In this document: one piece after another, positions 5,499 to 63,225 of the stretch
Numbering within the stretch: position 1 is the first letter of the stretch
How the letters are laid out: every line of letters starts with the position of its first letter
Source of the DNA: Macrostomum lignano
Lineage: Eukaryota
Length of the DNA: 64,000 bases
Direction of reading: 5' to 3'
Assembly: GCA_002269645.1 (NCBI GenBank)
Contig: NIVC01003458.1
Span: 1 to 64,000 of the forward strand
Program-made: the position numbers and the translations under genes
The notes under the pieces: model-generated
The model's input: the letters and a program-made list of their open reading frames with translations, nothing else
Told to the model about the DNA's origin: nothing
The model's database searches: none

Positions 5499-7555
5499 CT
5501 TCAGCCTAAAGGATTGCAAGCTTTTGCTTAAACTTTTTAATTTGTAACATTTTTATCTACTGAAATTGAAATATGAAATTTGCTTTTTACATTGAACTAA
5601 TTTTATTGCATTATCATGCCTAGACTTATAAAAATGTCAGCTATAGTGCTATACAGTGTAGTTCATTTTTATCTTTGCGTTTTTACTTAATTGGCCAATA
5701 ATTGATACTTACATGTATATCAACAAATGAAATATAACTTAAAACTTGCATTCCTTGCTACTGCAGGCAGTTTTCTTTGCATAAATTAGTTTTGATATTC
5801 ATCATCTCTCTACTGTTTATTATATATTAGTCTCAGTAATCATGCAGCAATCAGCATTAATTGATATAGTTAATATAAAAATTACGAGTGCATGCAAGGG
5901 ATTTTTGCCTGAAGGTAGGAAAATCCTAAATTAATACACCCTTGCCTTTGGTCAAATTCGTCATATTTAAATGTTTAAGTCTTCCAGACTTGATGATGAT
6001 AAGTGTTACATGCGGACCTCACTCATCATCATCAGGTTAAGTTCAAAAAGAAAATAATTTATTTAAATAATTGCTTCTTTTAAAATATTGAAAAGTTCAC
6101 TTTTTAAAACAAAAAAATTAAAGGCTTTTAATAAACAAAAGAGTAAATATATTTTTGGTTGCAAATTAATGTTGATAAAAAGAAATGCCTTGCAAAAATT
6201 AGGAAGAACCGAGGAACATGTTGTTTTTATACTCTGCTTACTTTTCTGTGAATTTTGTAAAATCATTCCTGTGTAGTGTAGGGCCACTCCACTGGCTGAT
6301 TGTTAGCGCTTGATTAACCCGATGTCATCTTTATACTCTTCTTTAAGTTATTCATTATCATATTATAAGATTCGTGTTTTAAATTATAGCCGTATGGGCT
6401 AGTCTTAGGCTATGGCTACAGCAATTTTAAGAATCCAACCAAAAACAAAAAGATTTGAATGGTTTTTTGAACTAGGCGTCTAGGCCTAGCAAAATTAAGT
6501 AAATAATTGAAAAATTACAAATATGTTCTTATCAATTAATAATTAAAAAACCATACATATAGCTTTTGAAATTCAGGTGCAAATCCGAAAAATTCTTGTG
6601 GGAGGCAAGCTTTGCTTTACTAAGCACTATAAGTACCTATAACCCAATATTGTAAAATAGACCTAGTATAGTTGCAGGCCAAAAAAGTATAGCCAAAACT
6701 TTCTTGGCCTGGCCACTGCTAAGGGAGGGCCGGGAGAGCATAGCCTGTTTGGCCTACCTCTGGATCTGCCCTTATTGAAATTTTATCATTTTTCATATTG
6801 CAATTACAATTTTATTTTTCAATAAAATATAGAATATATCTCTAACAAAAAATAAAGCTGCTAAAAACTATGACAATTGATAGCTTTTAATTTAAATATA
6901 TATTGCAATAATTAACAGTAACTATTGCATATATCCAATATACTAAAAATGAGTTGTCTGTATGTGGCCTGTGGGTAGGTAGGTAGGTATGCGATAGATT
7001 TCAGAAAAATTGGCTCAACCAATTTTCTTCAAACTTGCACCATTCGATCAGAAATTTTCCTGGGACGGTACATGCATCTTGGCTAAAAAATTGCTCAATT
7101 TTAAAGGGATTAAATATTTGAAAAACTTGCTTTTTTGCAAAGGTCAAGCAGCTCTTTCGACCTAAAATTCATTGTAAGAATGCTAGAGAAAAAACTGACT
7201 GGCTGAATTCCAATTGTGATAAAGATTGCATCACAACAAGTTGAAAACAGTGCCGAAGAAATGCACACACGACTTGATTTAAATTGCGTAACCAATATTG
7301 CTAACTTAAATTGAGACTGATACTGGCTGACTGAGAAATTGATTATGTCATTACTTTTTACTTCAATTGACTTGCTAAAGAATTGAATTATAAGGACCAC
7401 AATTCACGTTCTCCAATTGAAAACAGATAGCCAAGATGTGAATAGACTGGAATGCTAATGTAGCAACCTGGGTTCGAATCTTAGTAGTGCAAAAAGATTT
7501 TTTTATCAAAACACCTTAAAAACACAACAAAACTGCTAAACATAATAGAAGCGCA

Positions 7556-10000
7556 ATGTCAAACATAGAAGAGCCACCATGTCAAACATTAAAGAGCCAA
7601 CATTTCGAATATAAAAGAGTTACCATGTCAAACATAAAATAAGCACTATGTCAAACATATATGTGACTCCATGTCAACCATTAAAAAGCCACCATTTCAA
7701 ACATAGAAGAGCCACTATGTCAAACCTAAACAAGCCACCATGTCTAACATTTAAGAGCCACCATGTCAAACATTTAAGAGCCATTATGTCAAACATTAAA
7801 GAGCCACCATGTCAAACCTAAACAAGCCACCACGTCTAACATTTAAAAGCCACCATGTCAAACATTTAAGAGCCACCATGTCAAACATTTAAGAGCCACC
7901 ATGTCAAACATTTAAGAGCCACCATGTCAAACATTTAAGAGCCACCATGTCAAACATATATGTGACTTTATGTCAAACTTTAAAGAGCCACCATTTCGAA
8001 CATTAAATAGCCACTTTGTCAAACATTAGAGAGCCGCCGTGTCAAACATAAAAGAGCCACCAGGTTAAACATTAAAGAGCCACCATGTCAAACAATAAAG
8101 AGCCACCATGTCAAACAATAAAGAGCCACCATGTCAAACAATAAAGAGCCACCATGTCAAACATAGAAGAGCCACCATGTAAAACATTTAGGCGTCACCA
8201 TATCAAACATCAAATAGCCACTTTGTCAAACATTAAAGAGCCACCGTGTTAAACATAAAAGAGCCACCGTGTCAAACATAAAAGAGCCACCATGTTAAAC
8301 ATAGAAGAGCCACCATTTCAAACATAAAAGAGCCACCATGTCAGACATTAAAAAGCCACCGTATCAAACATAAAAGAGTTACAATGTAGAACATTAAAGA
8401 GCCACCATTTCAAACAGTAAAGAGCCACCATGTCAAACATAAAAGAGCTACCATGTCAAACATTTAAGAGCTACCATGTCAAACATTTAAGAGCTACCAT
8501 GTCAAAACATAAAAGTGCAATCATGTCAAACCTAAAAGAGCCACCATGTCAAACATAAAAGAGCCACCATTTTGAACATTAAAGAGCCACCATTTCAAAC
8601 AGTAAAGAGCCACCATGTATAACATTTAAGAGTCACCATATCAAACATCAAATAGCCACTTTGTCGAACATTAAAGAGCCTCCGTGTCAAACATAAAAGA
8701 GCCACCATGTTAAACATAGAAGAGCCACCATGTCAAACATAAAAGAGCCACCATGTCAGACATTAAAAAGCCACCGTATCAAACATAAAAGAGCCACCAT
8801 GTTAAACATAGAAGAGCCACCATGTCAAACATAAAAGAGCCACCATGTCAGACATTAAAAAGCCACCGTATCAAACATAAAAGAGTTACCATGTGGAACA
8901 TTAAAGAGCCACTATTTCACTCAGTAAAGAGCCACCATGTCAAACATAAAAGAGCCACCATGTCAAACATTAAAAAGCCACCATGGTGAACATTAAAGAG
9001 CTACCATGTCAAACATTAAAGAGCTATCATGTCAAACACAAAATAGCCACCATGTCAAACATTGAAGAGACACTATGTCAAACGTATACGTGACTCCATG
9101 TCAAACATAAAAGTGCCACCATGTCAAACATAAAAGTGCCACTATGTCAAAAATTAAAGAGCCACCATGTCGAACATTAAAGGGCCACCATGTCAAACAT
9201 AAAAGAGCCACCATGTCGAACATAAAAGAGCCACCATGCCAAATATAAAAGAGCCACCATGCCAAATATAAAAGAGCCACCATGTCGAACATTTAAGAGC
9301 CACCATGCAAAACATAAAAGAGCAACGATGTCAAACATAAAAGAGCCACCATGCCAAACATAAAAGAACAACGATGTCAAACATAAAAGAGCCACCATGT
9401 CAAACATAAAAGTGCCATTATGTCAAAAATATACGGGACTCCATGTCAAACATTAAAGAGCCACCATGTCAAACATTAAAGAGCTATCATGTCAAACACA
9501 GAATAGCCACCATGTAAAACATAGAAGAGACACTATGTCAAATGTATACGTGACTCCATGTCAAACATAACAGAGCCTTCATGTCAAACATAAAAGAGCC
9601 ACCATGTCAAACATTAAAGAGCCACCATGTCGAACATTAAAGGGCCACCATGTCAAACATTAAAGAGCCACCATGGCGAACATTAAAGAGCCACCTTGTC
9701 AAACATTAAAGAGCCATCATGTCAAACATAAAAGAGCCATCATGTGAAACATATACGTGACTCAATGTCAAACATTAAAGAGCCACCATGTCAAACATTA
9801 AAGAGCTATCATGTCAAACACAAAGTAGCTACCATGTCAAACATAGAAGAGCCACCATGTCAAACATTAAAGAGCTATCATGTCAAACACAAAAGAGCTA
9901 CCATGTCAAACATAGAAGAGCTACCATGTCAAACATTAAAGAGCCACCTTTTTAAACAAAAAAGAGACCCCATTTCAAACATAAAAGAAGTGTCATGCCA
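7556..10000. repeat. ~2.4-kb minisatellite, 21-22-bp unit AAAGAGCCACCATGTCAAACAT(T/A)
   Basis: Directly visible tandem array inside the Helitron. Confidence 0.95.
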
Positions 10001-18144: not shown

Positions 18145-18856
18145 TAAAATGGAAGCCTCTATCCATAGTGGAAGCCTCAATATCCATAATGGAAACCTGA
18201 ATATCCATAGTGGAAACCTCAATATCCATAGTGGAAGCCTCAATATCCATAGTGGAAGCCTCAATATCCATAGTGGAAGCCTCAATATCCATAGTGGAAC
18301 CCTCAAAATCCATAGTGGAAGCCTCAATATCCATAGTGGAAGCCTCAATATCCATAGTGGAAGCCTCAATATCCATAGTGGAAGCCTCAATATCCATAGT
18401 GGAACCCTCAAAATCCATAGTGGAACCCTCAAAATCCATAGTGGAAGCCTCAATATCCATAGTGGAAGCCTCAATATCCATAGTGGAAGCCTCAATATCC
18501 ATAGTTGAAGCCTCAATATCCATAGTGGAAGCCTCAATATCCATAGTGGAACCCTCAAAATCCATAGTGGAAGCCTCAATATCCATAGTGGAAGCCTCAA
18601 TATCCATAGTTGAAGCCTCAATATCCATAGTGGAAGCCTCAATATCCATAGTGGAAGCCTCAATATCCATAGTGGAAGCCTCAATATCCATAGTGGAAGC
18701 CTCAATATCCATAGTGGAAGCCTCAATATCCATAGTGGAAACCTGAATATCCATAGTGGAAACCTGAATATCCATAGTGGAAGCCTCAATATCCATAGTT
18801 GAAGCCTCAATATCCATAGTGGAAGCCTCAATATCCATAGTGGAAGCCTCAATATA
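18145..18856. repeat. 21-bp minisatellite AGTGGAAGCCTCAATATCCAT
   Basis: Tandem array ending about 90 bp upstream of the PSMA3 ATG. Confidence 0.95.
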
Positions 18857-18945
18857 GTGTAAGCCTCTGTAAACTATGGTAGATACATACTACTATTTGA
18901 CATACTACTACTTTTCCCTTTCATGCGGCGCGCCCACATCCAACA

Positions 18946-20943
18946 ATGAGCAGCATAGGAACAGGTTACGATTTGGACGTATCAGAGTACAGCCCCGAGG
19001 GCAAGCTATTCCAGGTCGAGTACGCGCACAAGGCTGTTGAATCCAGCGGCACCGCTGTCGGCATCTGCTGTCGGGATGGTGTCGTATTAGCCGTTGAAAA
19101 TATTGTCACGTCGAAGCTGTACGAGACTAATTGCAATCGGCGCGTGTTCCACATCGATAGGCACATCGGCATGGCCGCCTCCGGCCTGCTGCCCGACGCC
19201 AGGGCCGTTGCTAGGCACGCTCGCGAGGAGGCTGCCGATTATCGACAGGTAAGCCGGGTTATTTAGGAGCTTTAGAATCCGGCTAAATACCTAGAATTAA
19301 CCAGTAATCATAAGGGAGATCTCTGGAAATATTCCTGCTAGAAATCCTCCAGGAATACAAAGAATCTTCGGGTAGTCTGTTAGCACTTAGGAAATCTGGG
19401 GGAAATTTCTTGAAAGCTGGGGAATCTTTTGAGAAATAAGGAATTTTAAAAAGATCCGGAGGAAGGAGATCCGGAGGGAGATCCGGGAAATCCGCAAAAG
19501 ATCTGACAGAATCCTCAGGAGATCCGGGAGAATCCTCAGGAGATCCGGGAGAATCCTCAGGAGATCCGGGAGAATCCTCAGGAGACCCGGGAAATCCGCA
19601 AGAGATCTGACAGAATCCTCAGGAGATCCGGGGAATCCACAGGAGATCCGTGGAATCCTCAGGAGATCCGGGAGAATCCTCAGGAGATCCGGGAGAATCC
19701 TCAGGAGATCCGGGAGAATCCTCAGGAGATCCGGGAGAATCCTCAGGAGATCCGGGAGAATCCTCAGGAGATCCGGGGAATCCTCAGGAGATCCGTGGAA
19801 TCCTCAGGAGATCCGTGGAATCCTCAGGAGATCCGGGAGAATCCTCAGGAGATCCGGGAAATCCACAGGAGATCCGGGAGAATCCTCAGGAGATCCGGGA
19901 GAATCCTCAGGAGATCCGGGAGAATCCTCAGGAGATCCGGGAGAATCCTCAGGAGACCCGGGAAATCCGCAAGAGATCTGACAGAATCCTCAGGAGATCC
20001 GGGAAATCTTCGGGAGATCCGGGGAATCCTCAGGAGATCCGGGAGAATCCTCAGGAGATCCGGGGAATCCTCAGGAGATCCGGGAGAATCCTCAGGAGAT
20101 CCGGGGAATCCACAGGAGATCCGGGAGAATCCTCAGGAGATCCGGGAGAATACTCAGGAGACCCGGGAAATCCGCAAGAGATCCGGGAGCATCATCAGGA
20201 GACCCGGGAAATCCGCAAGAGATCTGACAGAATCCTCAGGTGATCCGGGAAATCTTCGGGAGATCCTGGGAATCCTTAGGAAATTCTCGGGAGATCCGGG
20301 GGGCTCGTTAAGATTTCCAAAGAAATTGCTACCCCAATAAATCTTAAAATGTCGTCTTGGTCAGTAAAAATATTAAGTAAAAATCTATCATTTGCTAGCC
20401 TATTAACTACAATACTACTAAGAAGTAGTTGAAGCAGATATTATTTTACCAACACCACACCAATAAACAACAATGTGTTATTCGCAGTCGCACGGTGAGC
20501 CGATGCCGCTATCCGAGCTGGCCAGCCGGGTCAGCAATCTGATGCACGCCTACACCATGTACAGCGCCGTTAGACCGTTCGGCTGCGGCGTCCTGCTGGC
20601 CGCCTTCGAGAACGGCCGGCCCCAGCTGTACGGAGTCGAACCGTCTGGCGTGTACTATAGTTACCATGGCTACGCTATTGGCAAGGCCAAGCAGAACGCT
20701 CGCACAGAGATTGAGAAACTAAAACTAGCCGAGTTGTCTGCCGCCAACGGGGTGAAAGAGGCCGCTAAAATTATTTACTCGTGCCACGACGAGGTCAAGG
20801 ATAAATATTTCGAATTGGATTTGTCCTTGACCTCGGCCGAGACAGCCGGTCGTCACGTGATAGTTACTGGGGAACAATGGACCGAGGCCAGTAACTATGC
20901 CAAGGCCGCACTGGAGGAGCACGACTCCGATGACGATGTTTGA
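18946..20943 (+). CDS. PSMA3: Proteasome subunit alpha type-3 (alpha7), 252 aa, 2 exons
   Basis: Exons 18946-19248 (donor CAG|GTAAGC) and 20488-20943 (acceptor TTCGCAG|). Motifs [40 protein letters not shown] and an acidic C-tail. Confidence 0.95.
19445..20300. repeat. 21-bp minisatellite GGAGATCCGGGAGAATCCTCA in PSMA3 intron
   Basis: Directly visible tandem array. Confidence 0.95.
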
Positions 20944-25779: not shown

Positions 25780-25960
<181 letters not shown>

Positions 25961-26291
25961 GAAGAGAAACAAATCTTAAGCGGGCCGGATTTCTATTGTG
26001 AAGTTTTAAATGACCCGAGGGCCGGATGCTTTTATGCATCGCATTGCAGATCAATAAATTAAAAAAACACAACTTCCAGCAGTTTATTTGTGTATAGTAG
26101 TTTAAATCGATAGATTTAAATGATTTTTATTTTTATAAAGGTTAATGTTCGTACAAATTTGCCTGCGTTAATAATCACAATCTAGTTCTAGCTCGTATGC
26201 TCATTAGCCGCTTGTTTCTTGTTACAGTTTTAATGTCATTCCAGCTGTCCAGCGAGTCAGTGTATAAAATTGGTCTTTTTCGGCCTTTTGC

Positions 26292-26691
26292 TCAGCGGCC
26301 AACTCTGAAATGTTTAAAATTGTGTTTGGTTGGAATTGAGTGTCTATATATAGATTTAGCGACACTAGAAAATGATTGAATTGAAGCAATAAAATTCTCA
26401 CCTGAAATCGCTCGGGTTGTACGTGTTGGGCTTCAGCGAGGCCAACAGAGCTTTGTACATTTTGTTCTTATTGTCCGAGCGCCGCTGAACGTAGTTGGGA
26501 CTCCAGCTGTAGGCGTTGCCGAAGAATCCGGCCGGATCGCCAGCCAGCAGGAACGACGCAGGGCGCGGACGGGTCGACAAAGATCGCAGCAGCTCGGATG
26601 GCTCAGAGATGCGCATTGTGGAGCAGCTGGTGCTGAGCAGCAGCGTCATAACTAGCAAAGCCATGGACACGTTGATGATTGCAAATCGCAT
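26292..26691 (-). CDS. Putative secreted neuropeptide precursor, 100 aa, C-terminal ...DFRV-GR (amidation signal)
   Basis: Exon 1 is 26691-26402 (donor AG|GTGAGA), then a 97-bp intron, then exon 2 at 26304-26292 (acceptor TTTCAG|A GTT GGC CGC TGA). Hydrophobic signal peptide, RR dibasic site, and a 27-aa peptide ending in Gly-Arg-stop. Confidence 0.72.
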
Positions 26692-27139
26692 TGTGCTGCT
26701 GGATGCTGGCTAGTAGAGAATTATCGATCCTAGAGACTAAAAAATCTTTTCGAGTGCAGGTTAGTCGAGTGCAACTATAGTTTCTTGGCGCAACTTCTGT
26801 ACTGCTGGGTGCTAGGAGGTATTTATACCCATGTCGCATGCAGAGCAATAGACGCGCTACTCTGTTACAAACATCGAACGGACCAACGGGATCTGATTGG
26901 TTCAGCAACGTGAAGTTCCTCAAATACTCGTACAAATGCAGTGTGTGCAGGATGGATTCGAATCAACAAAGATGAATACACGTGTGCTTGGGCCAGTCTA
27001 CATGTTCTCGATTTAATTAATGCATATAAAACTTCTAAAAACTTTAGCTTTACATGTGCATGTATAGTATGCATTATTTTCGATTTCGTTATAAAAATGA
27101 ATAACGACCGGTATGGCGGGGGGCGCAAGCGCCGTGATT

Positions 27140-28267: not shown

Positions 28268-30201
28268 ATGGTTGCGGAATTTCCTGTTGCTAAACTTCTG
28301 TACCTTGCTGTTCGACAGCTTGGAAAACCAATAGCCAATTTTTTTAAGGAACGAGCAAAATCGAGCTCATTCTTCCGGAATTACATTTGTATACCACCTG
28401 CACAGTGTAAGTATGATCTTTAAAATCTGCTTTGAATTTGACTAAGCAATATATGCAGTATACCTGTTAATAGAAATCTAATTAGTGATTATTAGTGATT
28501 GTGACGAATATTCAAGAGTAAAAAGAATACATAAAAACACATAATAATTAGTGATGAACACATAGAACCTTGATTATGATCAATGACAAACTGGCCAATG
28601 TTTGATCTTATATTTTTTCTCAAATGGATGGTAGTAGTATAATAATCACATGTAACTAATAAGCCAACAAAGTAACAAATCAGGTTGGGATGGCTTTGGA
28701 GGTTATGATCTTATAGGATAGTAATTAGATTAGGTGCAATTCTAGATCTGGCAAGTAACATTCATTAATAATACATGTAATAATGAACTTGTTTGCAGTA
28801 AGACTAATAACCAAGCTCCCAATAACTGTCCTTCCAAAGCCATATAGTTCAAAATGTTAAATAAGGTATTGCCAACCCAATAAAAAAGTATTGCTAACCA
28901 TCATCAGTATATATAAAAATACAACTTAATACATATTAAATATAGGCCTAAAAATACCAAATTACCAAAATACCAAAATTACCAAAATACACATTAAATT
29001 TTCCCAGTGAATATCAACCAAAGAACTAAGGATACAAAGGAACTGTCAATGTCACAGCTTAACAATGCCATAGCTAAAGGGGAGGATAGCCATCTTTCCT
29101 TTGGCAAAGATTGCAAAAGACTAAGTAAATTTTGGAAAAGGGCAAACAATGATATTTTTATCGTTGTTTGCCCTTTTCTTTTGATCTATACTAAGTAATA
29201 AAATCCTAGAATCTTAGTATACTTGCATAAACACTAAAAAGATATATATACTAAAAAATTAAGCTACTTTTTACTTTATTGGAGGCATTTTCTTTATACT
29301 AGTTTTTTTCAAAAAATAGTGATATGAGTTTAAACTGCTTAAAAGTATATATATTATTAAATAGTTAAAATAGTATTTAATAGTATATTATTTTTTAAAA
29401 ATCTATTCCCTTCTTATTATAATATTAGGTAATAAAATATATAACAGCATATAAATGCATATGTAGGCAAGGCAAGCACAAAAATTGTTTTAGCTGGTAT
29501 TAGCCTATCTTGTAATTTTGCTAAAATTTTTGCATGTATATAAGCTTGGTATACACATATTTTTATTGCAAAACAGGAATTGGCAAACTCTGGCCTATTG
29601 GCCACATGTAGCCAACTTAAGGTTCAAGTCTTTTCTTAGTTTTTTTTCCTCTCTCCTTTCCTTTCTCTTATCTCTCCTCAGATATTCCCTCTCCTCCCTC
29701 TTATCTGGCCTACAATCATGAGCCAGACTCTTTATCTGGCAAATTATATTTTTAATGTACACATGTCTTAATTCTTGTTCTTCAACAACTGGCTTTCTAC
29801 ATGGGGGTTGATTTTTGACAAACTAGAAATTTCATATCTGAATATCTACAAGCATTCCAATTTTAACTTCCGCATCCTCAGTGCACCACTGGTACGACAC
29901 CCGGCTCAAGATGCAGGCACTGGGTCTTGGCAAACCAAAGGCTGTTACTAAGCTCAACCCAGAACAGGCTGTGGACACCGGGGCCACCATTCTTGGCGAG
30001 GCTGTCATCTACCTGATCGCCGCGGCCACCATTATTGCTGAATATCAGCGACAGTCGCGCAGAGACAGCGCCAAGGAGGAGCTGGCAAAACAGAGGGTGG
30101 AAGACTTGGTGAATTCAGTGCATGAGCTCACAATGATAGCTGAGACCAACGCTGCTCAGCTGAGAGAGCTGGAGCGGCGAATCCATGCTAAGAAGCGGTG
30201 A
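28268..30201 (+). CDS. OPA3: OPA3 (optic atrophy 3) mitochondrial protein, 152 aa, 2 exons
   Basis: Exons 28268-28406 ([32 protein letters not shown], donor T|GTAAGT) and 29882-30201 ([18 protein letters not shown]..coiled coil). The intron falls at the same point as in vertebrate OPA3. Confidence 0.93.
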
Positions 30202-38701: not shown

Positions 38702-53861
<15,160 letters not shown>

Positions 53862-54129: not shown

Positions 54130-54860
<731 letters not shown>

Positions 54861-56402
54861 AATGGCTAACTAAACAACATGATGCACTGACAATCGAGAG
54901 TGCACTCTGAAAGACTCTTTGATTAAGAAGGAAAGGTTACAAAAGACGAACAGATGGCTCGAACAGGCAACTGAGAGAGCTTCGAAACCACAGAGAAATG
55001 CAGTTCTCAAACATCCCGTTCTCTCTAACGCAGCAGCCTCGGTAAGCCTTGCTGTTTTCGCCCGCTGTTAAGATGAAAGCGGGGCAAAAACATCTCAATG
55101 ACAAGGTTGATATGGCGAATTTACTGCGTGCCGTCTAGGCTAATTTGATCTTAATCACAGATTTAATGCGTTTTTTGTGATCATGCAATGTCGAAGGTTT
55201 GCTACGAAATGCATATTGCAAAATGCATAAAATCATTGTAGCTATTATAGAATAAGTTTTATAAGGTCAAGGACTATTGAAAATTAATTGTTTTACACTC
55301 TAAATTATGTGCATTAGAAGCAGAAACTGTCATGATTATTGATTGATTGTTGAGGCTGCAACACCTGTCATTTTGAGAGACTCTGGGAAATGTAAGATTT
55401 GTTGGCAGGAGTAAATTGTCGTACCCTCTGCTTGCTTCTTATTGGCTGCTTGGCCACTAAAAAACCAGCACTGTAAGCTGTACAATGCCTCTGTGTACAT
55501 CAAGACTCCTTCCCCTTGTATTGGCTTCTTATTGGCTGACTATTGGCTGGCTGCTTCTTATTTAGCCATCACCTCACTGTACAGTGCCTAGCGGTGTACG
55601 TACATTTAAATTCCGTCCCCTGCTTATTTCTCATTGGCTGGTCAACTTTGAGCATGACATATGGCCGTCAAAATGATCCGTTGTCGCTTTTGAATAACTC
55701 AGTTCAGTTGAATTGGCAAATAGCTAAAAATAACCTTCGATTTTATTTAGATTTCTCGAATTTCATCTGAATAAAACTGTATCCATATATAGTAATTCGA
55801 TGGATTCAACAAGCATACAATATCTCATTCGATTCGTCAAGCATCAAGTAGCAATTACGAGCGTAGACCTGCCGTTTTGTTTACTGCTTTAGTCCCAGGA
55901 ATTTTCTCCAAAAAAATTTCAATCAACTGCCGCTAATCCTCTACAGCTCTCTCGTTCCCATCGAGACAGAGCGCTTCCCTCACACCTCTTGTTTATTCGA
56001 TGATTGCTTCCTTGCAAGATTTAATGGCCCGCATAACATTTCTATCTCACAGTTGCGCTGAAGACAATAAAAGCTCAGAAATTTGAGAATGGTTGGAAAC
56101 AGTTGCAGAATAGGAAGCATTGTATCGGGGGGAGCCCGTTGCCGTTGTACGGAAATGGCACGAAGCTTTATTGCTCAGAGATCCGATGTTGTATTGGAAA
56201 CGATTTTGAGATTTTTTACATTAGGGCTGTAGCAGCGTGCCAGAGTTGAATCAGTGTGGAATAAGAGGCAGTTTTCAATCTTCGAAAATTCTTTTCAAAA
56301 GGCCTTCCCTGAATTGCTGTATTTGCTACCCCTTTTGAGAAGCACACTTTCTATATCGAATAGAGGACGAAAACAATAGAAAAAAAACATACCCTATTCA
56401 GA

Positions 56403-57118
<716 letters not shown>

Positions 57119-57419: not shown

Positions 57420-60400
57420 TCACTGCAGCTTCTGCGGCTGCGACTGTCTCAGGCCGGCCTTGGCCGCTCGTTCGGCGTCCCAGCGCATGGCCAGCAGCTG
57501 CACCGGGGCGCACAGGAACAGCGTCAGGCCCGAGGACAGCCAGAACCAGAATGCAAATGATGGATAGCCAGTCTGGTAGTCGGACCATATTAGGTAGAGA
57601 ATCCAGGTGAGTAGATAGGATCCACCTGGAGTTGGAATGGTTACCGCCGTAGGGAATCGGTGCAAAATTATATTGTTGACTTTTTGTACACTTTTTATTG
57701 TGAGGAGTTAAGAATGACCTGGGTTTTGGGGTGTTGGCCGAGGGACTGGGGTTTATGGGGTGTTGGCTGAGGGACTGGGGTTTATGGGGTGTTGGCTGAG
57801 GGACTGGGGTTTATGGGGTGTTGGCTGAGGGACTGGGGTTTATGGGGTGTTGGCTGAGGGACTGGGGTTTATGGGGTGTTGGCTGAGGGACTGGGGTTTA
57901 TGGGGTGTTGGCTGAGGGACTGGGGTTTATGGGGTGTTGGCTGAGGGACTGGGGTTTATGGGGTGTTGGCTGAGGGACTGGGGTTTATGGGGTGTTGGCT
58001 GAGGGACTAATAGTAAATATAGAATGCTTCATGGCGAAAATAAAGCGGATTATTTTATCTCCTAAACTGCAATCTAGCGTCCTATTAGCCTACTCAAACT
58101 CTAAGCCAGCAGGTCATAGAAGTTTTCATTCAAATGGGGTCAGTGTAATGCAAATAAAATTTTCTCATGGCTTCATCTGGACCCATGCACCCTCCGATCG
58201 CAGCCTCTCTCTTTGCAGGCAATAGCTATATTTTTCTTATTCTTTTGGCAGAATTTGTCATCGTTGTCCTGTAATAAGCTCAAAATCCTAATAGTTTAAA
58301 CTCCAATTACTCTCATGACAGCTGTTCCAGAAACTGGGACAGTTAGCACTGAGTAGATCCCCGATTTATTTTCTTTAGGATTCTCAAGTGGAACACACAT
58401 CACTATTAATAGCTATAATTTCATTTTTATGAATGACTAGACAGTCTAACTTTCAGTCCGACTTTGTCAGCTGTGCTAAATGCAATTTATGATCGACTTG
58501 AACTACTGAAGTGAGTGGCAACTGAAGAGTTTCTAAGAAAAAAAGTTCATACACAAGAATCACGGATAATTAAAGTGAAAGGGCGCTACACTAGCGTATC
58601 TTTTCGTGCGAAATGCATTAGCTGGATTATTTACTGCCGAGATTCTCCCACCGAGATTCTCCCACCGAGATTCACCTGCCGAGATTCTCCTGCCGAGATT
58701 CTCCCACCGATATTCTCCCACCGAGATTCACCTGCCGAGATTCTCCTGCCGAGATTCCCCTGCCGAGATTCACCTGCCGAGATTCTCCCACCGAAATTCT
58801 CCCACCGAGATTCCCCTGCCGAGATTCCCCTGCCGAGATTCCCTTGCCGAGATTCCCCTGCCGAGATTCTCCCACCGAGATTCTCCCACCGAGATTCTCC
58901 CACCGAGATTCACCTGCCGAGATTCTCCCACCGAGATTCTCCCACTGAGATTCTCCCACCGAGATTCTCCCACCGAGATTCTCCCACCGAGATTCTCCCA
59001 CCGAGATTCTCCCACCGAGATTCTCCCACCGAGATTCTCCCACCGAGATTCTCCCACCGAGATTCTCCCACCGAGATTCCCCTGCCGAGATTCTCTTGCC
59101 GAGATTCTTCTGCCGAGATTCCCCTGCCGAGATTCTCTTGCCGAGATTCTCCCACCGAGATTCACCTGCCGAGATTCTCCCACCGAGATTCCCCTGCCGA
59201 GATTCTCCCACCGAGATTCTCCCACCGAGATTCTCCCACCGTGATTCTCCCACCGAGATTCCCCTGCCGAGATTCTCCCACCGAGATTCTCCCACCGAGA
59301 TTCTCCCACCGAGATTCTCCCACCGAGATTCTCCCACCGAGATTCTCCCACCGAGATTCTCCCACCGAGATTCTCCCACCGAGATTCTCCCACCGAGATT
59401 CTCCCACCGAGATTCTCCCACCGAGATTCTCCCACCGAGATTCTCCCACCGAGATTCCCCTGCCGAGATTCTCTCACCGAGATTCTCCCACCGAGATTCC
59501 CCTGCCGAGATTCTCTTGCCGAGATTCTTCTGCCGAGATTCCCCTGCCGAGATTCACCTGCCGAGATTCTCCCACCGAGATTCACCTGCCGAGATTCTCC
59601 CACCGAGATTCACCTGCCGAAATTCCCCTGACGAGATTCTTCCGCAATCGGGGCTGCTTTACGAGCTAGATGGGAAGTTTTCAGTTTTTCAGCACTGAAT
59701 TCCCAATTTCTCACCTGCTGGACTTCCAAATTGCAAATGCAGCCAGCAGGCATTTTGTCCGAGCTGCTCTCAAAAGTTTATCAGCTTTCAGCTTAGAAAA
59801 TTATTTGAAGGCTGAGTTTTGCAGTACATGAGGGACTGAGAGACGCAATAATAGAGATCGTTTTTAAGACAGAACGAATGTTCTCATATTAGTAACACTC
59901 ACAGATACTAGAAGAACTAGATGGGCCACTCAGCACATTTGCGTGCAAGCTACTTTCAGTTCAGTAGTAGGTTAAACAGAAGCATTTTAATGTATTCTTA
60001 AGCCAAGGCTCATTTATTGGCTCTTATACCCCCAGCTTAAACCCTCCAACCGCGCCTTTTCACACTACCCCCCGCCCCACCCCAATTTTTGATTTTCTCG
60101 GAATTCCAGGCTAAAGATGCCATGTATATTTCAGTGGACTGGCTAATGTACATTATTGCTGAACCAATTAGCAAGCTGTTTACGCCTGCAAGCTTGGGCT
60201 TCTAAACTTATCAAAGTCATTTCAGCTGGCTTTATTTTTTAAAAATAGCTTATGCATTCTTCTTTGCTACTGAACTGAAAGTAGAAAGCTGTTTTAATAA
60301 GTATATATGCCTGAATAGTGGCCCATCTAGTTATTTTAGTATCTGTGGTAAAACCTGCCTGTTTTATTGCTGTACTGAGTGTCGGGCTAATTTGTTTAAC

Positions 60401-61863
60401 AATTTTACATACCTGCAGCGATAAACAGAGCAAAAATGGTCATCATGAGCTGCTTGTTGAGCTTTAGCCGGGGCACCAGCAGCTCCAGCAGGACCGCCAG
60501 CAGGACCGCCAGCAGCAGCAGCAGCGAGAGGACAATTAGTAGCAGCACAATCACTGCGAAAGCTGATGGCGATGCAAGAGAGCGAGGCTTGAATTACTAC
60601 TGCTAGTCAAGTATGAGTAGCAGTGGATGCACGTTTTTATCGTTTTTAAAATGCAGATACAAAGCAAACTTTAAAAAATAAAGATAAGAAACTACGAGTA
60701 TATGTTCACTGAGAATTGTTGAAGGTTTCATGAAGCAGGAGACCACTAAGACCAATCAGGAAACCATGACTAAACAGGAAACCACTGACCAATCAGGAAA
60801 CCAGTATGACCAATCAGGAAACCACTATGATTAATAAGGAAACCAGTATGACCAATCTTGAAACCACTATGCTCAATCAGGAAACCAGTATGACCAATCA
60901 GGAAACCACTATGATTAATAAGGAAACCACTATGACCAATCAGGAAACCAGTATGACCAATCAGGAAACCAGTATGACCAATCAGGAAACCACTATGATT
61001 AATAAGGAAACCACTATGACCAATCTTGAAACCACTATGCTCAATCAGGAAACCAGTATGACCAATCAGGAAACCACTATGATTAATAAGGAAACCACTA
61101 TGACCAATCAGGAAACCAGTATGACCAATCAGGAAACCACTATGACCAATCAGGAAACCACTATGACCAATCAGGAAACCACTATGACCAATCAGGAAAA
61201 CACTTTGACTAACAAAGAAACCACTATGACCAATCTTGAAACCACTATGCTCAATCAGGAAACCAGTATGACCAATCAGGAAACACTATGACCAATCAGG
61301 AAACCATTATGACCAATCAGGGAACACTATGAGCAATCAGGAACCCACATGACCAATCAGGAAACCACTATGACCAATCAGGAAACCACTATGAGCAATC
61401 AGGAAACCACTATGATTAATCAGGGAACCACTATGAGCAATCAGGAAACCACTATGATTAATCAGGGAACCACTATGACCAATCAGGAAACCACTATGAC
61501 CAATCAGGAAACGACTATGACCAATCAAGAAACCACTATGAGCAATCAGGAAACCACTATAAGCAATCAGGAAACCACTATGAGCAATCAGGAAACCACT
61601 ATGAGCAATCAGGAACCCACATGACCAATCAGGAACCCACCAATGCAGCACCATCCAGCTGACATGCCGCACTCACCAGTGCCATTATCGTAGACCCAAG
61701 GCAGGCCGCGGTGCCACTTGCAGCTGGCATTGGTGCTGCACTCGCCCATGCGCCAGAAGTCGAGCGCGGCCGCGGCCACGGTTGAGGTGAAGCAGCCGAT
61801 GCAGCCGGCAACCAGCAGCCAGCGGAGCAGCCGAGACTTGGCCGAGCGAACGCCTGCGCCCAT
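57420..61863 (-). CDS. Claudin/PMP22/EMP-like four-transmembrane protein, 189 aa, 3 exons
   Basis: Exons 61863-61641 (donor G|GTGGG), 60553-60413 (acceptor TTCGCAG|, donor G|GTATGT) and 57625-57420 (acceptor CTCCAG|). Both introns are phase 1 and join into an open 570-nt frame. Four hydrophobic segments, a Trp after TM1, a Cys-rich ECL1 with HRGLPW and N-glycosylation sites, and a GYPSFAFWFW TM4 lead-in. Confidence 0.75.
57735..58007. repeat. 29-bp G-rich minisatellite GGGGTTTATGGGGTGTTGGCTGAGGGACT
   Basis: Direct. Confidence 0.9.
58636..59640. repeat. 14-bp minisatellite CCGAGATTCTCCCA
   Basis: Direct; abuts the partial MITE B copy. Confidence 0.95.
59900..60347 (+). mobile_element. MITE family A copy 3 (best preserved)
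   Basis: TIR CACAGATACTA(G/A)AA(G/T)AACTAGATGGGCCACT at both ends; body homologous to copies 1 and 2. Confidence 0.8.
60742..61640. repeat. 21-bp minisatellite ATGACCAATCAGGAAACCACT
   Basis: Direct; fills most of intron 1 of the claudin-like gene and starts at its donor site. Confidence 0.95.
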
Positions 61864-62249: not shown

Positions 62250-63225
62250 CGAGAGAGAGAGGAGATGAGAGAGGAGAGAGGATGGAGAGAGAAGAGAAAG
62301 GAGAGAGAAGAGAGAGGAGAGAGGAGAGAGAAGAGAAAGGAGAGAGAAGAGAGAGGAGAGAGGAGAGAGAAGAGAAAGGAGAGAGAAGAGAGAGGAGAGA
62401 GGAGAGAGAGGAGAGAGGAGAGAGAAGAGAAAGGAGAGAGAAGAGAGAGGAGAGAGGAGAGAGAAGAGAGAGGAGAGAGAAGAGAGAGGAGAGAGAAGAG
62501 AGAGGAGAGAGAGAGGATGGAGAGAGAAGAGAAAGGAGAGAGAAGAGAGAGGAGAGAGGATCGAGAGAGAAGAGAAAGGAGAGAGAAGAAAGAGGAGAGA
62601 GGAGAGAGAAGAGGGAGGAGAGAGGAGAGAGAAGAGAGAGGAGAGAGAAGAGAGAGGAGAGAGAAGAGAGAGGAGAGAGAGAGGATGGAGAGAGAAGAGA
62701 AAGGAGAGAGAAGAGAGAGGAGAGAGGATGGAGAGAGAAGAGAAAGGAGAGAGAATAGAGAGGAGAGAGGAGAGAGAAGAGAAAGGAGAGAGAAGAGAGA
62801 GGAGAGAGGAGAGAGAAGAGAAAGGAGAGAGAAGAGAGAGGAGAGAGGAGAGAGAAGAGAAAGGAGAGAGAAGAGAAAGGAGAGAGGAGAGAGAAGAGAA
62901 AGGAGAGAGAAGAGAGAGGAGAGAGGAGAGAGAAGAGAAAGGAGAGAGAAGAGAGAGGAGAGAGGAGAGAGAAGAGAAAGGAGAGAGAAGAGGGAGGAGA
63001 GAGGAGAGAGAAGAGAGAGGAGAGAGAAGAGAGAGGAGAGAGAAGAGAGAGGAGAGAGAGAGGATGGAGAGAGAAGAGAAAGCAGAGAGAAGAGAGAGGA
63101 GAGAGAGAGGATGGAGAGAGAAGAGAAAGCAGAGAGAATAGAGAGGAGAGAGAGGAGAGAGAGGAAAGAGAGGAGAGAGGAGAGAGAGGAGAGAGGAGAG
63201 AGGACAGAGAGGACAGAATAGAAAT
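62250..63225. repeat. Polypurine (GA-rich) higher-order low-complexity array
   Basis: Direct. Confidence 0.95.

What the first reader, a model, noticed from the sequence alone, without database searches (positions are those of the whole stretch)
26292..26691. Hidden amidated neuropeptide gene completed by a 13-nt terminal exon
The track ORF stops at ..NPSDFR*. A canonical 97-bp intron (AG|GTGAGA..TTTCAG|A) splits the Arg codon and adds V-G-R-stop. The result is signal peptide, pro-region, RR, then SDNKNKMYKALLASLKPNTYNPSDFRV-amide (27 aa). A phase-2 intron in the penultimate Arg codon of an R-X-amide is the known hallmark of NPY/NPF genes, yet this peptide lacks the RPRF/RQRY motif and I cannot assign it to a known family. 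It is a candidate novel or highly derived neuropeptide.
Basis: partly seen in the sequence, partly recalled or inferred. Interest (0 to 1): 0.75.

Follow-up and report, generated by a model that had tools for sequence, protein, structure and literature searches.

The report
Orphan amidated peptide precursor, flatworm gene
This is a real, already-deposited but unnamed two-exon gene of the flatworm Macrostomum lignano that looks like the precursor of a 27-residue amidated signalling peptide; it has the intron position typical of NPY/NPF genes but no sequence similarity to them, so its family is still open.

Summary
On the minus strand, a 290-nt first coding exon (26691..26402), a 97-nt GTGAGA…TTTCAG intron (26401..26305) and 13 terminal coding nt (26304..26292) give a 100-aa product ending …NPSDFRVGR*.

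It is not "hidden". The window is the start of Macrostomum lignano contig NIVC01003458.1, and the spliced protein is deposited as PAA51342.1 (BOX15_Mlig023917g3, "hypothetical protein"). That annotation is built only from transcripts. Two syntenic copies elsewhere in the assembly keep the splice sites, the RR site, the peptide and the G-R tail unchanged.

The layout fits an amidated secretory peptide precursor: signal peptide, 45-aa pro-region, RR, 27-aa peptide, Gly-Arg-stop. The intron lies between nt 2 and 3 of the Arg codon before the amidated residue, which is the published NPY/NPF hallmark.

Every sequence test for NPY/NPF membership fails:
- No Pfam hit.
- hhalign probability 0.24% against planarian NPYs.
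- A C-terminally anchored score no better than shuffles.
- DFRV where the family has RPR[F/Y/L].

An exhaustive HMMER search of 1.84 billion proteins found no true homologue. Expression site, the peptide itself and its receptor are untested.

Verdict: a lineage-restricted candidate regulatory peptide of modest interest. There is roughly a 25% chance that it is a strongly derived NPY-superfamily paralogue.

The parts
26822..26827 (-). TATAAA box of the putative core promoter, 136 nt upstream of the ATG; a CCAAT motif lies about 70 nt further upstream
   Evidence: position; sequence. The box is unchanged in the two paralogous copies; nearby substitutions are at 26833, 26837 and 26846. Its role as a promoter is inferred.
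26620..26691 (-). Start codon and predicted signal peptide (residues 1-24, MRFAIINVSMALLVMTLLLSTSCS). Small residues at -3/-1 allow cleavage after residue 22, 23 or 24.
   Evidence: hydrophobic core, KD 9-mer mean up to 2.9. AF2 helix over residues 2-24. No dedicated signal-peptide predictor was available.
26485..26619 (-). Pro-region (residues 25-69, TMRISEPSELLRSLSTRPRPASFLLAGDPAGFFGNAYSWSPNYVQ)
   Evidence: AF2 gives low confidence here and no beta structure. The similarity of residues 53-69 to prokaryotic cadherin-like repeats is chance amplified by tandem repetition.
26479..26484 (-). Dibasic R70-R71, the predicted prohormone-convertase cleavage site
   Evidence: codons CGG CGC. Identical in all three copies. 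Cleavage is inferred.
26402..26478 (-). Exon-1 part of the predicted mature peptide: residues 72-96 plus the first two nt (AG) of the Arg97 codon
   Evidence: The only two differences among copies in this part are synonymous (L83, P93). AF2 predicts a helix over residues 65-85, with pLDDT about 82 for residues 71-80.
26305..26401 (-). 97-nt phase-2 intron, GTGAGA...TTTCAG. If it is retained, the reading frame stops at once (AGG TGA), giving a non-amidatable ...SDFR end.
   Evidence: Splice sites are identical in the three copies, with one substitution in the intron (26383). The transcript-based GenBank CDS requires this splice.
26292..26304 (-). Terminal 13 coding nt: third base of Arg97, then Val98, Gly99 (amide donor), Arg100 (basic residue removed by carboxypeptidase) and the TGA stop
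   Evidence: Invariant in the three copies.
26083..26291 (-). Probable 3' UTR with polyadenylation-like signals: ATTAAA at 26234, AATAAA at 26131 and 26088
   Evidence: Which signal is used was not determined.

Best explanation
This is a small, transcribed, two-exon gene of Macrostomum lignano (Mlig023917). It has three near-identical syntenic copies and encodes a 100-aa secretory prepropeptide.

Inferred processing:
1. Signal peptidase removes about 24 residues.
2. A PC2-type prohormone convertase cuts after R70-R71.
3. A carboxypeptidase removes R100.
4. Peptidylglycine alpha-amidating monooxygenase converts G99 into the C-terminal amide.

The predicted product is SDNKNKMYKALLASLKPNTYNPSDFRV-NH2 (27 aa, monoisotopic [M+H]+ 3113.62). 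It has an N-terminal helix and a Pro-containing flexible tail ending in aromatic-Arg-hydrophobic-amide. It most likely acts as an extracellular signalling peptide (neuropeptide or peptide hormone) through a G protein-coupled receptor.

Splicing is required for amidation, because the unspliced message stops right after Arg97. By sequence the precursor is a lineage-restricted orphan. It cannot be filed in NPY/NPF or any other described family, although its intron position and phase are those of NPY/NPF genes.

Shown here: gene structure, the transcript-based gene model, the motif layout, the three conserved copies, and the absence of homologues. Inferred: each processing step, secretion, amidation, cell type and receptor.
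For: - Sequence anatomy.
- The exact spliced protein is deposited as PAA51342.1, plus two paralogues, with the same coordinates on the contig.
- The Mlig_3_7 GenBank annotation derives only from RNA-seq and transcript assemblies plus TransDecoder (PMC5730564), so a transcript with this junction exists.
- The three copies keep the splice sites, RR, peptide and GR. The 6 CDS differences comprise 4 synonymous and 2 non-synonymous changes, and both non-synonymous changes lie outside the peptide.
- The arrangement is unique among the 110 ORFs of the window.
- AF2 shows no globular fold (pTM 0.23) but a helix over the N-terminal two-thirds of the peptide, as expected for a processed peptide rather than a domain protein.
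- M. lignano has a nervous-system PC2 homologue that is essential for development (PMC4490696).
- Planarian NPY-family precursors show the same layout of N-terminal spacer, dibasic site, peptide and G-basic-stop (npy-10, npy-8).
Against: - There is no direct evidence of expression site, secretion, cleavage or amidation. No paper or supplement mentions Mlig023917.
- No orthologue was found outside M. lignano, so conservation of the processing sites across species is untested.
- The three copies are only about 2% diverged. The intron (1/97) is as conserved as the CDS (6/290), so purifying selection is not demonstrated.
- The 45-aa pro-region is long for a single-peptide precursor.
- A signal-peptide predictor and a cleavage-site predictor were not available.
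Confidence: 0.55

Rival explanations
1. It is a true but strongly derived member of the NPY/NPF superfamily. Flatworms have expanded this family (11 genes in Schmidtea). On this reading, the paralogue kept the family's diagnostic phase-2 intron in the penultimate Arg codon, the Arg-X-amide end and the helix-plus-tail shape. It lost the RPR[F/Y] signature and all other sequence similarity. It would act on an NPY/NPF-type receptor or a descendant of one.
For: - The intron lies between nt 2 and 3 of the Arg codon preceding the amidated residue. This is exactly the feature that Collins 2010 and Yanez-Guerra 2019 describe as conserved across Bilateria and use as an orthology criterion.
- Planarian npy-11 is an accepted 'atypical' member without the C-terminal aromatic residue (RPRL-amide).
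- Planarian npy-7 and npy-10 also end within a few codons of the intron (…RPRYG*, …RPRYGKR*).
- Several planarian members have an N-terminal spacer and a dibasic site before the peptide.
- A helix followed by an unstructured C-terminal tail is predicted.
Against: - No hit to Pfam PF00159 or to any other family at E up to 10.
- hhalign against 9 planarian NPY prohormones gives probability 0.24% and aligns only an RPR in the pro-region.
- The C-terminally anchored BLOSUM62 score against 14 family cores is -15.9, whereas members score +25 to +54 against each other, and 25% of shuffles do as well.
- The end is DFRV, so the Arg at -4 and the Pro at -3, which are invariant in the planarian set, are both absent.
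- The peptide is 27 aa rather than about 36-40, and it follows a 45-aa spacer.
- The intron argument suffers from ascertainment, because the finding was picked for having an intron at the C-terminus. The CDS also has only 2 MAG|R sites.
Confidence: 0.25
2. It is a secreted amidated peptide that is not a neuronal or hormonal signal. For example, it could be a gland, epidermal, reproductive-tract or host-defence peptide (cationic, helical, amidated) that acts outside the body or on membranes.
For: - The peptide has net charge about +3 to +4 (5 K/R against 2 D, with an amidated end) and a predicted helix.
- Lineage-restricted, fast-evolving small secreted proteins are common among reproduction-related genes in Macrostomum (theme of PMC7336406 and PMC5977470, listed).
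- No homologues were found outside the species.
Against: - Amphipathicity is only moderate: the maximum hydrophobic moment is 0.48 over 11 residues, and mean hydrophobicity is near zero.
- The gene ID does not appear in the supplementary tables held for the Macrostomum reproduction-gene study. This is weak evidence, because the files may be incomplete.
- The single dibasic site plus a Gly-basic end, with an Arg-X-amide terminus, is more typical of regulatory peptides.
Confidence: 0.12
3. It is a transcribed young or orphan ORF with no peptide function. On this reading, the signal-peptide-like start, the RR and the G-R end are fortuitous, and the CDS was called only because it just reaches the ORF caller's length threshold.
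For: - There is no homologue anywhere and no domain.
- The product is exactly 100 aa, which is TransDecoder's default minimum (my own knowledge of the software; its use is stated).
- The three copies are too similar to show selection.
Against: - A hydrophobic N-terminus, a dibasic site, a Gly-basic-stop created only by splicing, and a TATA box at a suitable distance occur together once among 110 ORFs in the window.
- Non-synonymous changes avoid the peptide, though the numbers are small.
Confidence: 0.08

Closest known systems
NPY/NPF superfamily prohormone genes, especially the flatworm ones (Moniezia expansa npf; Schmidtea mediterranea npy-1 to npy-11, including the 'atypical' npy-11)
   Same: - A phase-2 intron between nt 2 and 3 of the Arg codon that precedes the amidated C-terminal residue.
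- Arg at the penultimate position.
- A Gly amide donor followed by basic residue(s).
- In some planarian members, a terminal coding segment of only a few codons (npy-7, npy-10) and an N-terminal spacer plus dibasic site before the peptide (npy-3, -4, -8, -10).
- A predicted helix followed by a flexible tail.
   Different: - No RPR[F/Y/L] motif; the end is DFRV.
- No detectable similarity to the conserved Y/L-rich helix, whether tested by Pfam, by hhalign or by the anchored score.
- The peptide is 27 aa, not about 36-40.
- The spacer is 45 aa, against at most 14 aa in the planarian sequences read here.
- The receptor is unknown.
Flatworm FMRFamide-like peptides (FRFamide/YIRFamide types, e.g. 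planarian npp-4 and spp-11)
   Same: The C-terminus has an aromatic residue, then Arg, then a hydrophobic amidated residue (F-R-V-NH2 against F-R-F-NH2 or I-R-F-NH2). The comparison of motifs rests on the family names and on general knowledge.
   Different: FLPs are short peptides (about 4-12 aa) and are usually encoded in several copies per precursor. Here there is a single 27-aa peptide ending in Val. No sequence hit was found.
PRXamide peptides (CAPA/periviscerokinin FPRV-amide, pyrokinin, neuromedin U; planarian ppl-1)
   Same: The peptide ends in R-V-amide, as insect CAPA peptides do. All 'RVamide' literature hits are of this PRV-amide type.
   Different: The Pro before the Arg defines that family, and here the end is D-F-R-V. 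No Pfam hit was found. This resemblance is recalled from memory and was rejected on the motif.

Membership tests
NPY/NPF superfamily | [quoted passage not shown] | tested here: met
   AG|GTGAGA...TTTCAG|A splits Arg97, and V98 is the residue before Gly99. The feature is defined in PMC2953531 and bioRxiv 10.1101/712687. Caveats: the finding was selected for a C-terminal intron, and the CDS has only 2 MAG|R sites.
NPY/NPF superfamily | C-terminal R-X-R-[F/Y]-amide (RPRF or RPRY in flatworms; RPRL in the atypical npy-11) | tested here: not met
   The C-terminus is D-F-R-V-(G). R54, P55 and R56 are invariant in the alignment of 9 planarian members, and here only the last Arg is present.
NPY/NPF superfamily | Sequence similarity to the family core (Pfam PF00159, or the Y/L-patterned helix before the C-terminus) | tested here: not met
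   No Pfam family at E up to 10. hhalign probability 0.24% against the planarian NPY profile. The anchored BLOSUM62 mean is -15.9, against +25 to +54 among members, and 25% of shuffles score as high or higher.
NPY/NPF superfamily | Gly amidation signal followed by basic cleavage residue(s) right after the C-terminal residue | tested here: met
   V98-G99-R100-stop, invariant in the three copies.
NPY/NPF superfamily | One long peptide (about 36-40 aa) that follows the signal peptide directly or after a short spacer | tested here: inconclusive
   Here the peptide is 27 aa and follows a 45-aa spacer and RR. The planarian members read here have spacers of 0-14 aa, and some yield shorter products.
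NPY/NPF superfamily | PP-fold-like shape: an amphipathic helix followed by a flexible C-terminal tail | tested here: inconclusive
   Single-sequence AF2 predicts a helix over residues 65-85 and then mostly coil. The hydrophobic moment is moderate. This shape is not specific to the family.
NPY/NPF superfamily | Activates an NPY/NPF-type G protein-coupled receptor | not testable with these tools
   This needs receptor expression assays.
Amidated neuropeptide / peptide-hormone precursor (generic kind) | N-terminal signal peptide | tested here: met
   The start is M-R, followed by a 17-residue hydrophobic core and a small-residue c-region, STSCS. AF2 predicts a helix over residues 2-24. This is a crude test; no SignalP was available.
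Amidated neuropeptide / peptide-hormone precursor (generic kind) | The peptide is flanked by a basic convertase site upstream and by Gly plus basic residue(s) downstream | tested here: met
   R70-R71 upstream and G99-R100 downstream.
Amidated neuropeptide / peptide-hormone precursor (generic kind) | Processing sites and the peptide end are conserved in related species | tested here: inconclusive
   Only within-genome copies about 2% diverged are available, and all their sites are identical. No orthologue was found in 5.8 billion clusters or 1.84 billion representatives.
Amidated neuropeptide / peptide-hormone precursor (generic kind) | Expression in neurons or endocrine cells that have PC2 and the amidating enzyme; the peptide is detected | not testable with these tools
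   No expression or peptidomic data were found for Mlig023917. A PC2 homologue exists in the M. lignano nervous system.
Cadherin-like / Ig-like repeat proteins (the long hits of the exhaustive search) | A significant match to one repeat unit, and a beta-sandwich fold | tested here: not met
   The full-sequence E-values of 2e-14 to 8e-4 come from summing 4-14 repeats. Every single-domain E-value exceeds 8e3 at library size. AF2 shows no beta strands.
BBE (berberine-bridge) domain protein (UniProt automatic name) | A match to the BBE domain model | tested here: not met
   No Pfam family at E up to 10. The name appears only as an automatic UniRef label.

The most novel reading that the evidence does not exclude
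The gene is a genuine descendant of the bilaterian NPY/NPF gene that has lost every sequence signature of the family (…DFRV-NH2 instead of …RPRF/Y-NH2). It keeps only the diagnostic phase-2 intron, the penultimate Arg and amidation. That would show that intron position can outlast peptide sequence as a marker of neuropeptide ancestry. It would also point to hidden NPY-superfamily diversity in early-branching flatworms, possibly with a co-diverged receptor.
Probability: 0.25. Interest if true: 0.6.

Novelty: new member of a known kind. Interest (0 to 1): 0.38.

Why it matters
Macrostomum lignano is the flatworm model in which transgenesis works, yet I found no catalogue of its neuropeptides in the literature I could search.

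If the prediction holds, this would be a lineage-restricted regulatory peptide that can be studied with the tools already available in this animal: a promoter reporter, RNAi and peptidomics.

It is also a test case for how much weight the "NPY intron" criterion can bear when the sequence signal is gone. That question matters for neuropeptide orthology calls across animals.

A practical side point: the product is exactly 100 aa. Shorter peptide precursors are therefore probably missing from the deposited M. lignano protein set, and the species' peptide repertoire may be under-annotated.

Tried and rejected
1. Insect origin, which was my first guess from the composition. Rejected by the exact protein match to M. 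lignano.

2. Long repeat proteins P0004-P0008 as homologues. Rejected: they are cadherin-like or Ig-like repeat proteins that match a 17-residue stretch of the pro-region. Each single stretch is non-significant, and the score is summed over tandem repeats.

3. The UniProt label "BBE domain-containing protein". No Pfam support.

4. NPY/NPF membership by sequence. It failed the Pfam scan, hhalign against 9 planarian NPY prohormones, and an anchored score with shuffle controls and positive controls.

5. The "STRPRP" in the pro-region as a relic NPF end. It is only a 7-column hhalign match (P = 0.25), no Gly-basic follows it, and there is no intron there.

6. Finding M. lignano NPF genes for comparison. 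The profile search returned planarian, annelid, insect and vertebrate members but none from M. lignano. This is probably because precursors under 100 aa are not in the protein set. The M. lignano genome cannot be scanned with these tools.

7. Expression data. There was no mention of Mlig023917, FRVamide or similar terms in the full texts or in the held supplements of two M. lignano papers. No M. lignano neuropeptide catalogue or cell atlas was found.

8. Key flatworm neuropeptide surveys (McVeigh 2009, Koziol 2016) are not held in the library.

9. Planarian and schistosome prohormone tables. No peptide ends in FRV-amide; the only "RVamide" string belongs to the short RRVV-amide family.

10. 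Selection analysis. The copies are too similar (6 CDS differences) to be decisive.

11. Extra copies in the window. None found.

12. Fold search. Not run, because the model (pTM 0.23) is too poor to give meaningful matches.

Full report
**1. The observation**

- An ATG at 26691 opens a 97-codon ORF that, read unspliced, ends …NPSDFR* (26398..26691).
- The last two bases of exon 1 (AG, at 26403-26402) are followed by GTGAGA.
- 97 nt further on, TTTCAG precedes A GTT GGC CGC TGA (26304..26292).
- Splicing gives a 303-nt CDS and a 100-aa product ending …SDFRVGR*. The junction is phase 2, inside Arg97.
- Read unspliced, the frame stops immediately (AGG TGA), so the amidation signal exists only in the spliced message.

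The pattern is not a forking-paths artefact. I scanned all 110 ATG-ORFs of at least 60 aa in the window for any GT…AG (40-300 nt) that would append X(1-3)-G-[KR](1-2)-stop. Two ORFs passed the lax test. Only this one also had strong splice sites and a signal-peptide-like N-terminus.

A TATAAA box lies 136 nt upstream of the ATG. ATTAAA/AATAAA signals lie 57, 160 and 203 nt after the stop.

**2. Where it comes from, and whether it is "hidden"**

The spliced protein has an exact match in public databases: PAA51342.1, BOX15_Mlig023917g3, "hypothetical protein", from Macrostomum lignano. Two more copies exist, g1 and g2, at 99% and 98% identity.

The annotated CDS range on contig NIVC01003458.1 is 26292-26691, identical to the finding's coordinates. 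The window is therefore the first 64 kb of that contig.

The GenBank annotation of this assembly (Mlig_3_7) was produced only from RNA-seq and transcript assemblies (StringTie, TACO, a de novo assembly), with TransDecoder calling the ORFs (PMC5730564). A 100-aa CDS that requires the 26402/26304 junction is therefore indirect but real transcript evidence for the splice. I could not inspect the reads themselves. The gene is not hidden. It is deposited, unnamed and uncharacterised.

**3. The three copies**

All three loci are syntenic, each lying next to an OPA3-domain gene. They differ by about 2%. This fits the known duplicated genome of the DV1 line.
- Splice sites, the 13 terminal nt, R70-R71, the 27-mer and G99-R100 are identical.
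- Of the 6 variable CDS positions, 4 are synonymous: S39, P44, and L83 and P93 inside the peptide.
- The other 2 are non-synonymous: V14A in the signal peptide and T40A in the pro-region.

This agrees with constraint on the peptide. However, the intron (1/97) is as conserved as the CDS (6/290), so the copies are too young to demonstrate selection.

**4. Anatomy and the inferred mechanism**

| Residues | Feature |
|---|---|
| 1-24 | Charged start (M-R), 17-residue hydrophobic core, small-residue c-region |
| 25-69 | Pro-region |
| 70-71 | RR |
| 72-98 | SDNKNKMYKALLASLKPNTYNPSDFRV |
| 99-100 | G-R, then stop |

Single-sequence AlphaFold2 finds no globular fold (pTM 0.23). It predicts helices for the signal peptide (residues 2-24) and for residues 65-85, followed by a Pro-containing tail that is mostly coil.

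The peptide has 5 K/R and 2 D residues, and only moderate amphipathicity (maximum hydrophobic moment 0.48).

The most economical reading is a classical amidated regulatory-peptide precursor. The steps would be signal-peptide removal, convertase cleavage after RR, removal of R100 by a carboxypeptidase, and amidation at the expense of G99. The product would be …DFRV-NH2 ([M+H]+ 3113.62). Every one of these steps is inferred. The only supporting fact from the organism is that a PC2 homologue is expressed in the M. lignano nervous system and is essential for development (PMC4490696).

**5. Relatives elsewhere**

- The word-indexed search of 5.8 billion clusters found only the gene's own cluster.
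- The exhaustive phmmer search of 1.84 billion representatives returned the gene itself plus five long proteins (692-1990 aa), with E-values from 2e-14 to 8e-4.
- Those five are cadherin-like or Ig-like repeat proteins. Their repeat motif (…GxxFxGNxFSWTPxYTQAG…) resembles residues 53-69 of the pro-region.
- Re-scoring shows that every individual stretch has an independent E-value above 8,000 at library size. The significance comes only from summing 4-14 tandem repeats. AF2 shows no beta structure either.

These hits are chance. The precursor has no detectable homologue outside M. lignano. That is common for small peptide precursors, but it leaves conservation untested.

**6. The NPY/NPF question**

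- Collins et al. [quoted passage not shown] They accept npy-11, which lacks the aromatic end, as an "atypical" member because it shares that organisation.
- Yanez-Guerra et al. 2019 place the intron between nt 2 and 3 of that codon across Bilateria. They use its absence to exclude echinoderm look-alikes.
- The M. lignano gene has exactly this position and phase.
- Some planarian members also share the very short terminal coding segment (npy-7 …RPRYG*, npy-10 …RPRYGKR*) and an N-terminal spacer plus dibasic site (npy-3, -4, -8, -10).

Every sequence-based criterion fails.
- No Pfam family matches at E up to 10, including PF00159.
- hhalign of the precursor against nine planarian NPY prohormones gives probability 0.24%. 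It aligns only an RPR in the pro-region.
- In an ungapped comparison anchored at the amidated residue, against 14 family cores (planarian, annelid, insect, mammalian PP), the peptide scores -15.9 on average. Members score +25 to +54 against each other, and 25% of shuffles match or beat the observed value. Allowing shifts does not help.
- The end is D-F-R-V, while R-P-R is invariant in the planarian set. Even npy-11 is RPRL.

The intron evidence is also weakened in two ways. First, the finding was selected precisely because an intron sits at the extreme C-terminus. Second, the CDS contains only two MAG|R proto-splice sites, and Arg97 is the only AGR codon among nine Arg codons.

I therefore do not file the gene as an NPY/NPF member. 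I keep "derived NPY-superfamily paralogue" as the main rival, at about 25%.

No M. lignano NPF could be recovered for comparison. A likely reason is that the protein set lacks precursors under 100 aa. This product is exactly 100 aa, which is TransDecoder's default minimum (my own knowledge of the software).

**7. Other families considered**

- Flatworm FMRFamide-like peptides share the aromatic-Arg-hydrophobic-amide end. They are short, though, and usually multi-copy.
- CAPA/PRX-amide peptides end in PRV-amide, but the defining Pro is absent here.
- None of the 51 planarian prohormones, nor the schistosome ones listed with them, yields an …FRV-amide peptide.
- No paper in the searchable library mentions Mlig023917 or FRVamide, and I found no M. 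lignano neuropeptide catalogue.
- The two main flatworm surveys (McVeigh 2009, Koziol 2016) are not held. A prior description there cannot be excluded.

**8. Verdict**

This is a real, transcript-supported gene with the full layout of an amidated secretory peptide precursor. It is restricted, as far as can be seen, to M. lignano. It shows NPY/NPF-like gene structure but no NPY/NPF sequence.

It is a new, unnamed member of a well-known kind (candidate regulatory peptide precursor), not a new kind of system. Interest is modest, because what is missing is exactly what matters: expression site, the peptide itself, orthologues and a receptor. All of these are readily testable in this transgenic model species.

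Noticed in passing
window 7538-9988, 39553-40583, 41728-43644, 44964-46541, 47348-48485, 54130-54873, 56403-57118, 58637-59640, 60736-61640, 62251-63217: The window is dense with long tandem satellite arrays. Examples: a 23-bp unit x106, (ATAGATAG)n x129, a 38-bp unit x50 and a 40-bp unit x39. Many of the long 'ORFs' in the mechanical list run through these arrays.
   Followed up: no
window ~28268-30201 (+): An OPA3-domain gene (152 aa, PF07047) lies divergently upstream of the peptide gene. It is syntenic in all three copies of the locus.
   Followed up: partly
window ~18928-20943 (+), with arrays at 18150-18855 and 19477-20294: A proteasome alpha-subunit gene (258 aa, PF10584/PF00227) lies downstream. 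A 21-bp tandem array (x40) sits inside its annotated range, presumably in an intron.
   Followed up: no
window 25781-25956: A (GA)n/(CT)n microsatellite of about 90 units lies immediately beyond the 3' end of the peptide gene.
   Followed up: no
window 26485-26535 (pro-region residues 53-69): PAGFFGNAYSWSPNYVQ resembles the GNxFSWTPxYTQAG motif of prokaryotic cadherin-like repeat proteins. The exhaustive search gave E-values down to 2e-14, but only through summation over tandem repeats. This is a useful warning about repeat-inflated E-values.
   Followed up: yes
whole gene, 26292-26691: The product is exactly 100 aa, which is the default minimum ORF length of the caller used for this annotation. 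Shorter peptide precursors are therefore probably missing from the M. lignano protein set. That would explain why a planarian NPY profile found no M. lignano NPF.
   Followed up: partly
UniRef entries A0A1I8GCV1 / A0A1I8H1X6 / A0A1I8GCT0: UniProt's automatic name for this protein, 'BBE domain-containing protein', has no support in a Pfam scan at E up to 10.
   Followed up: yes
window 26853-26866 and 26260-26268 compared with L001: Copy g1 (L001) has a 14-15-nt deletion in the promoter-proximal region, upstream of the TATA box, and a 9-nt deletion in the 3' UTR. The CDS and intron have no indels in any copy.
   Followed up: no
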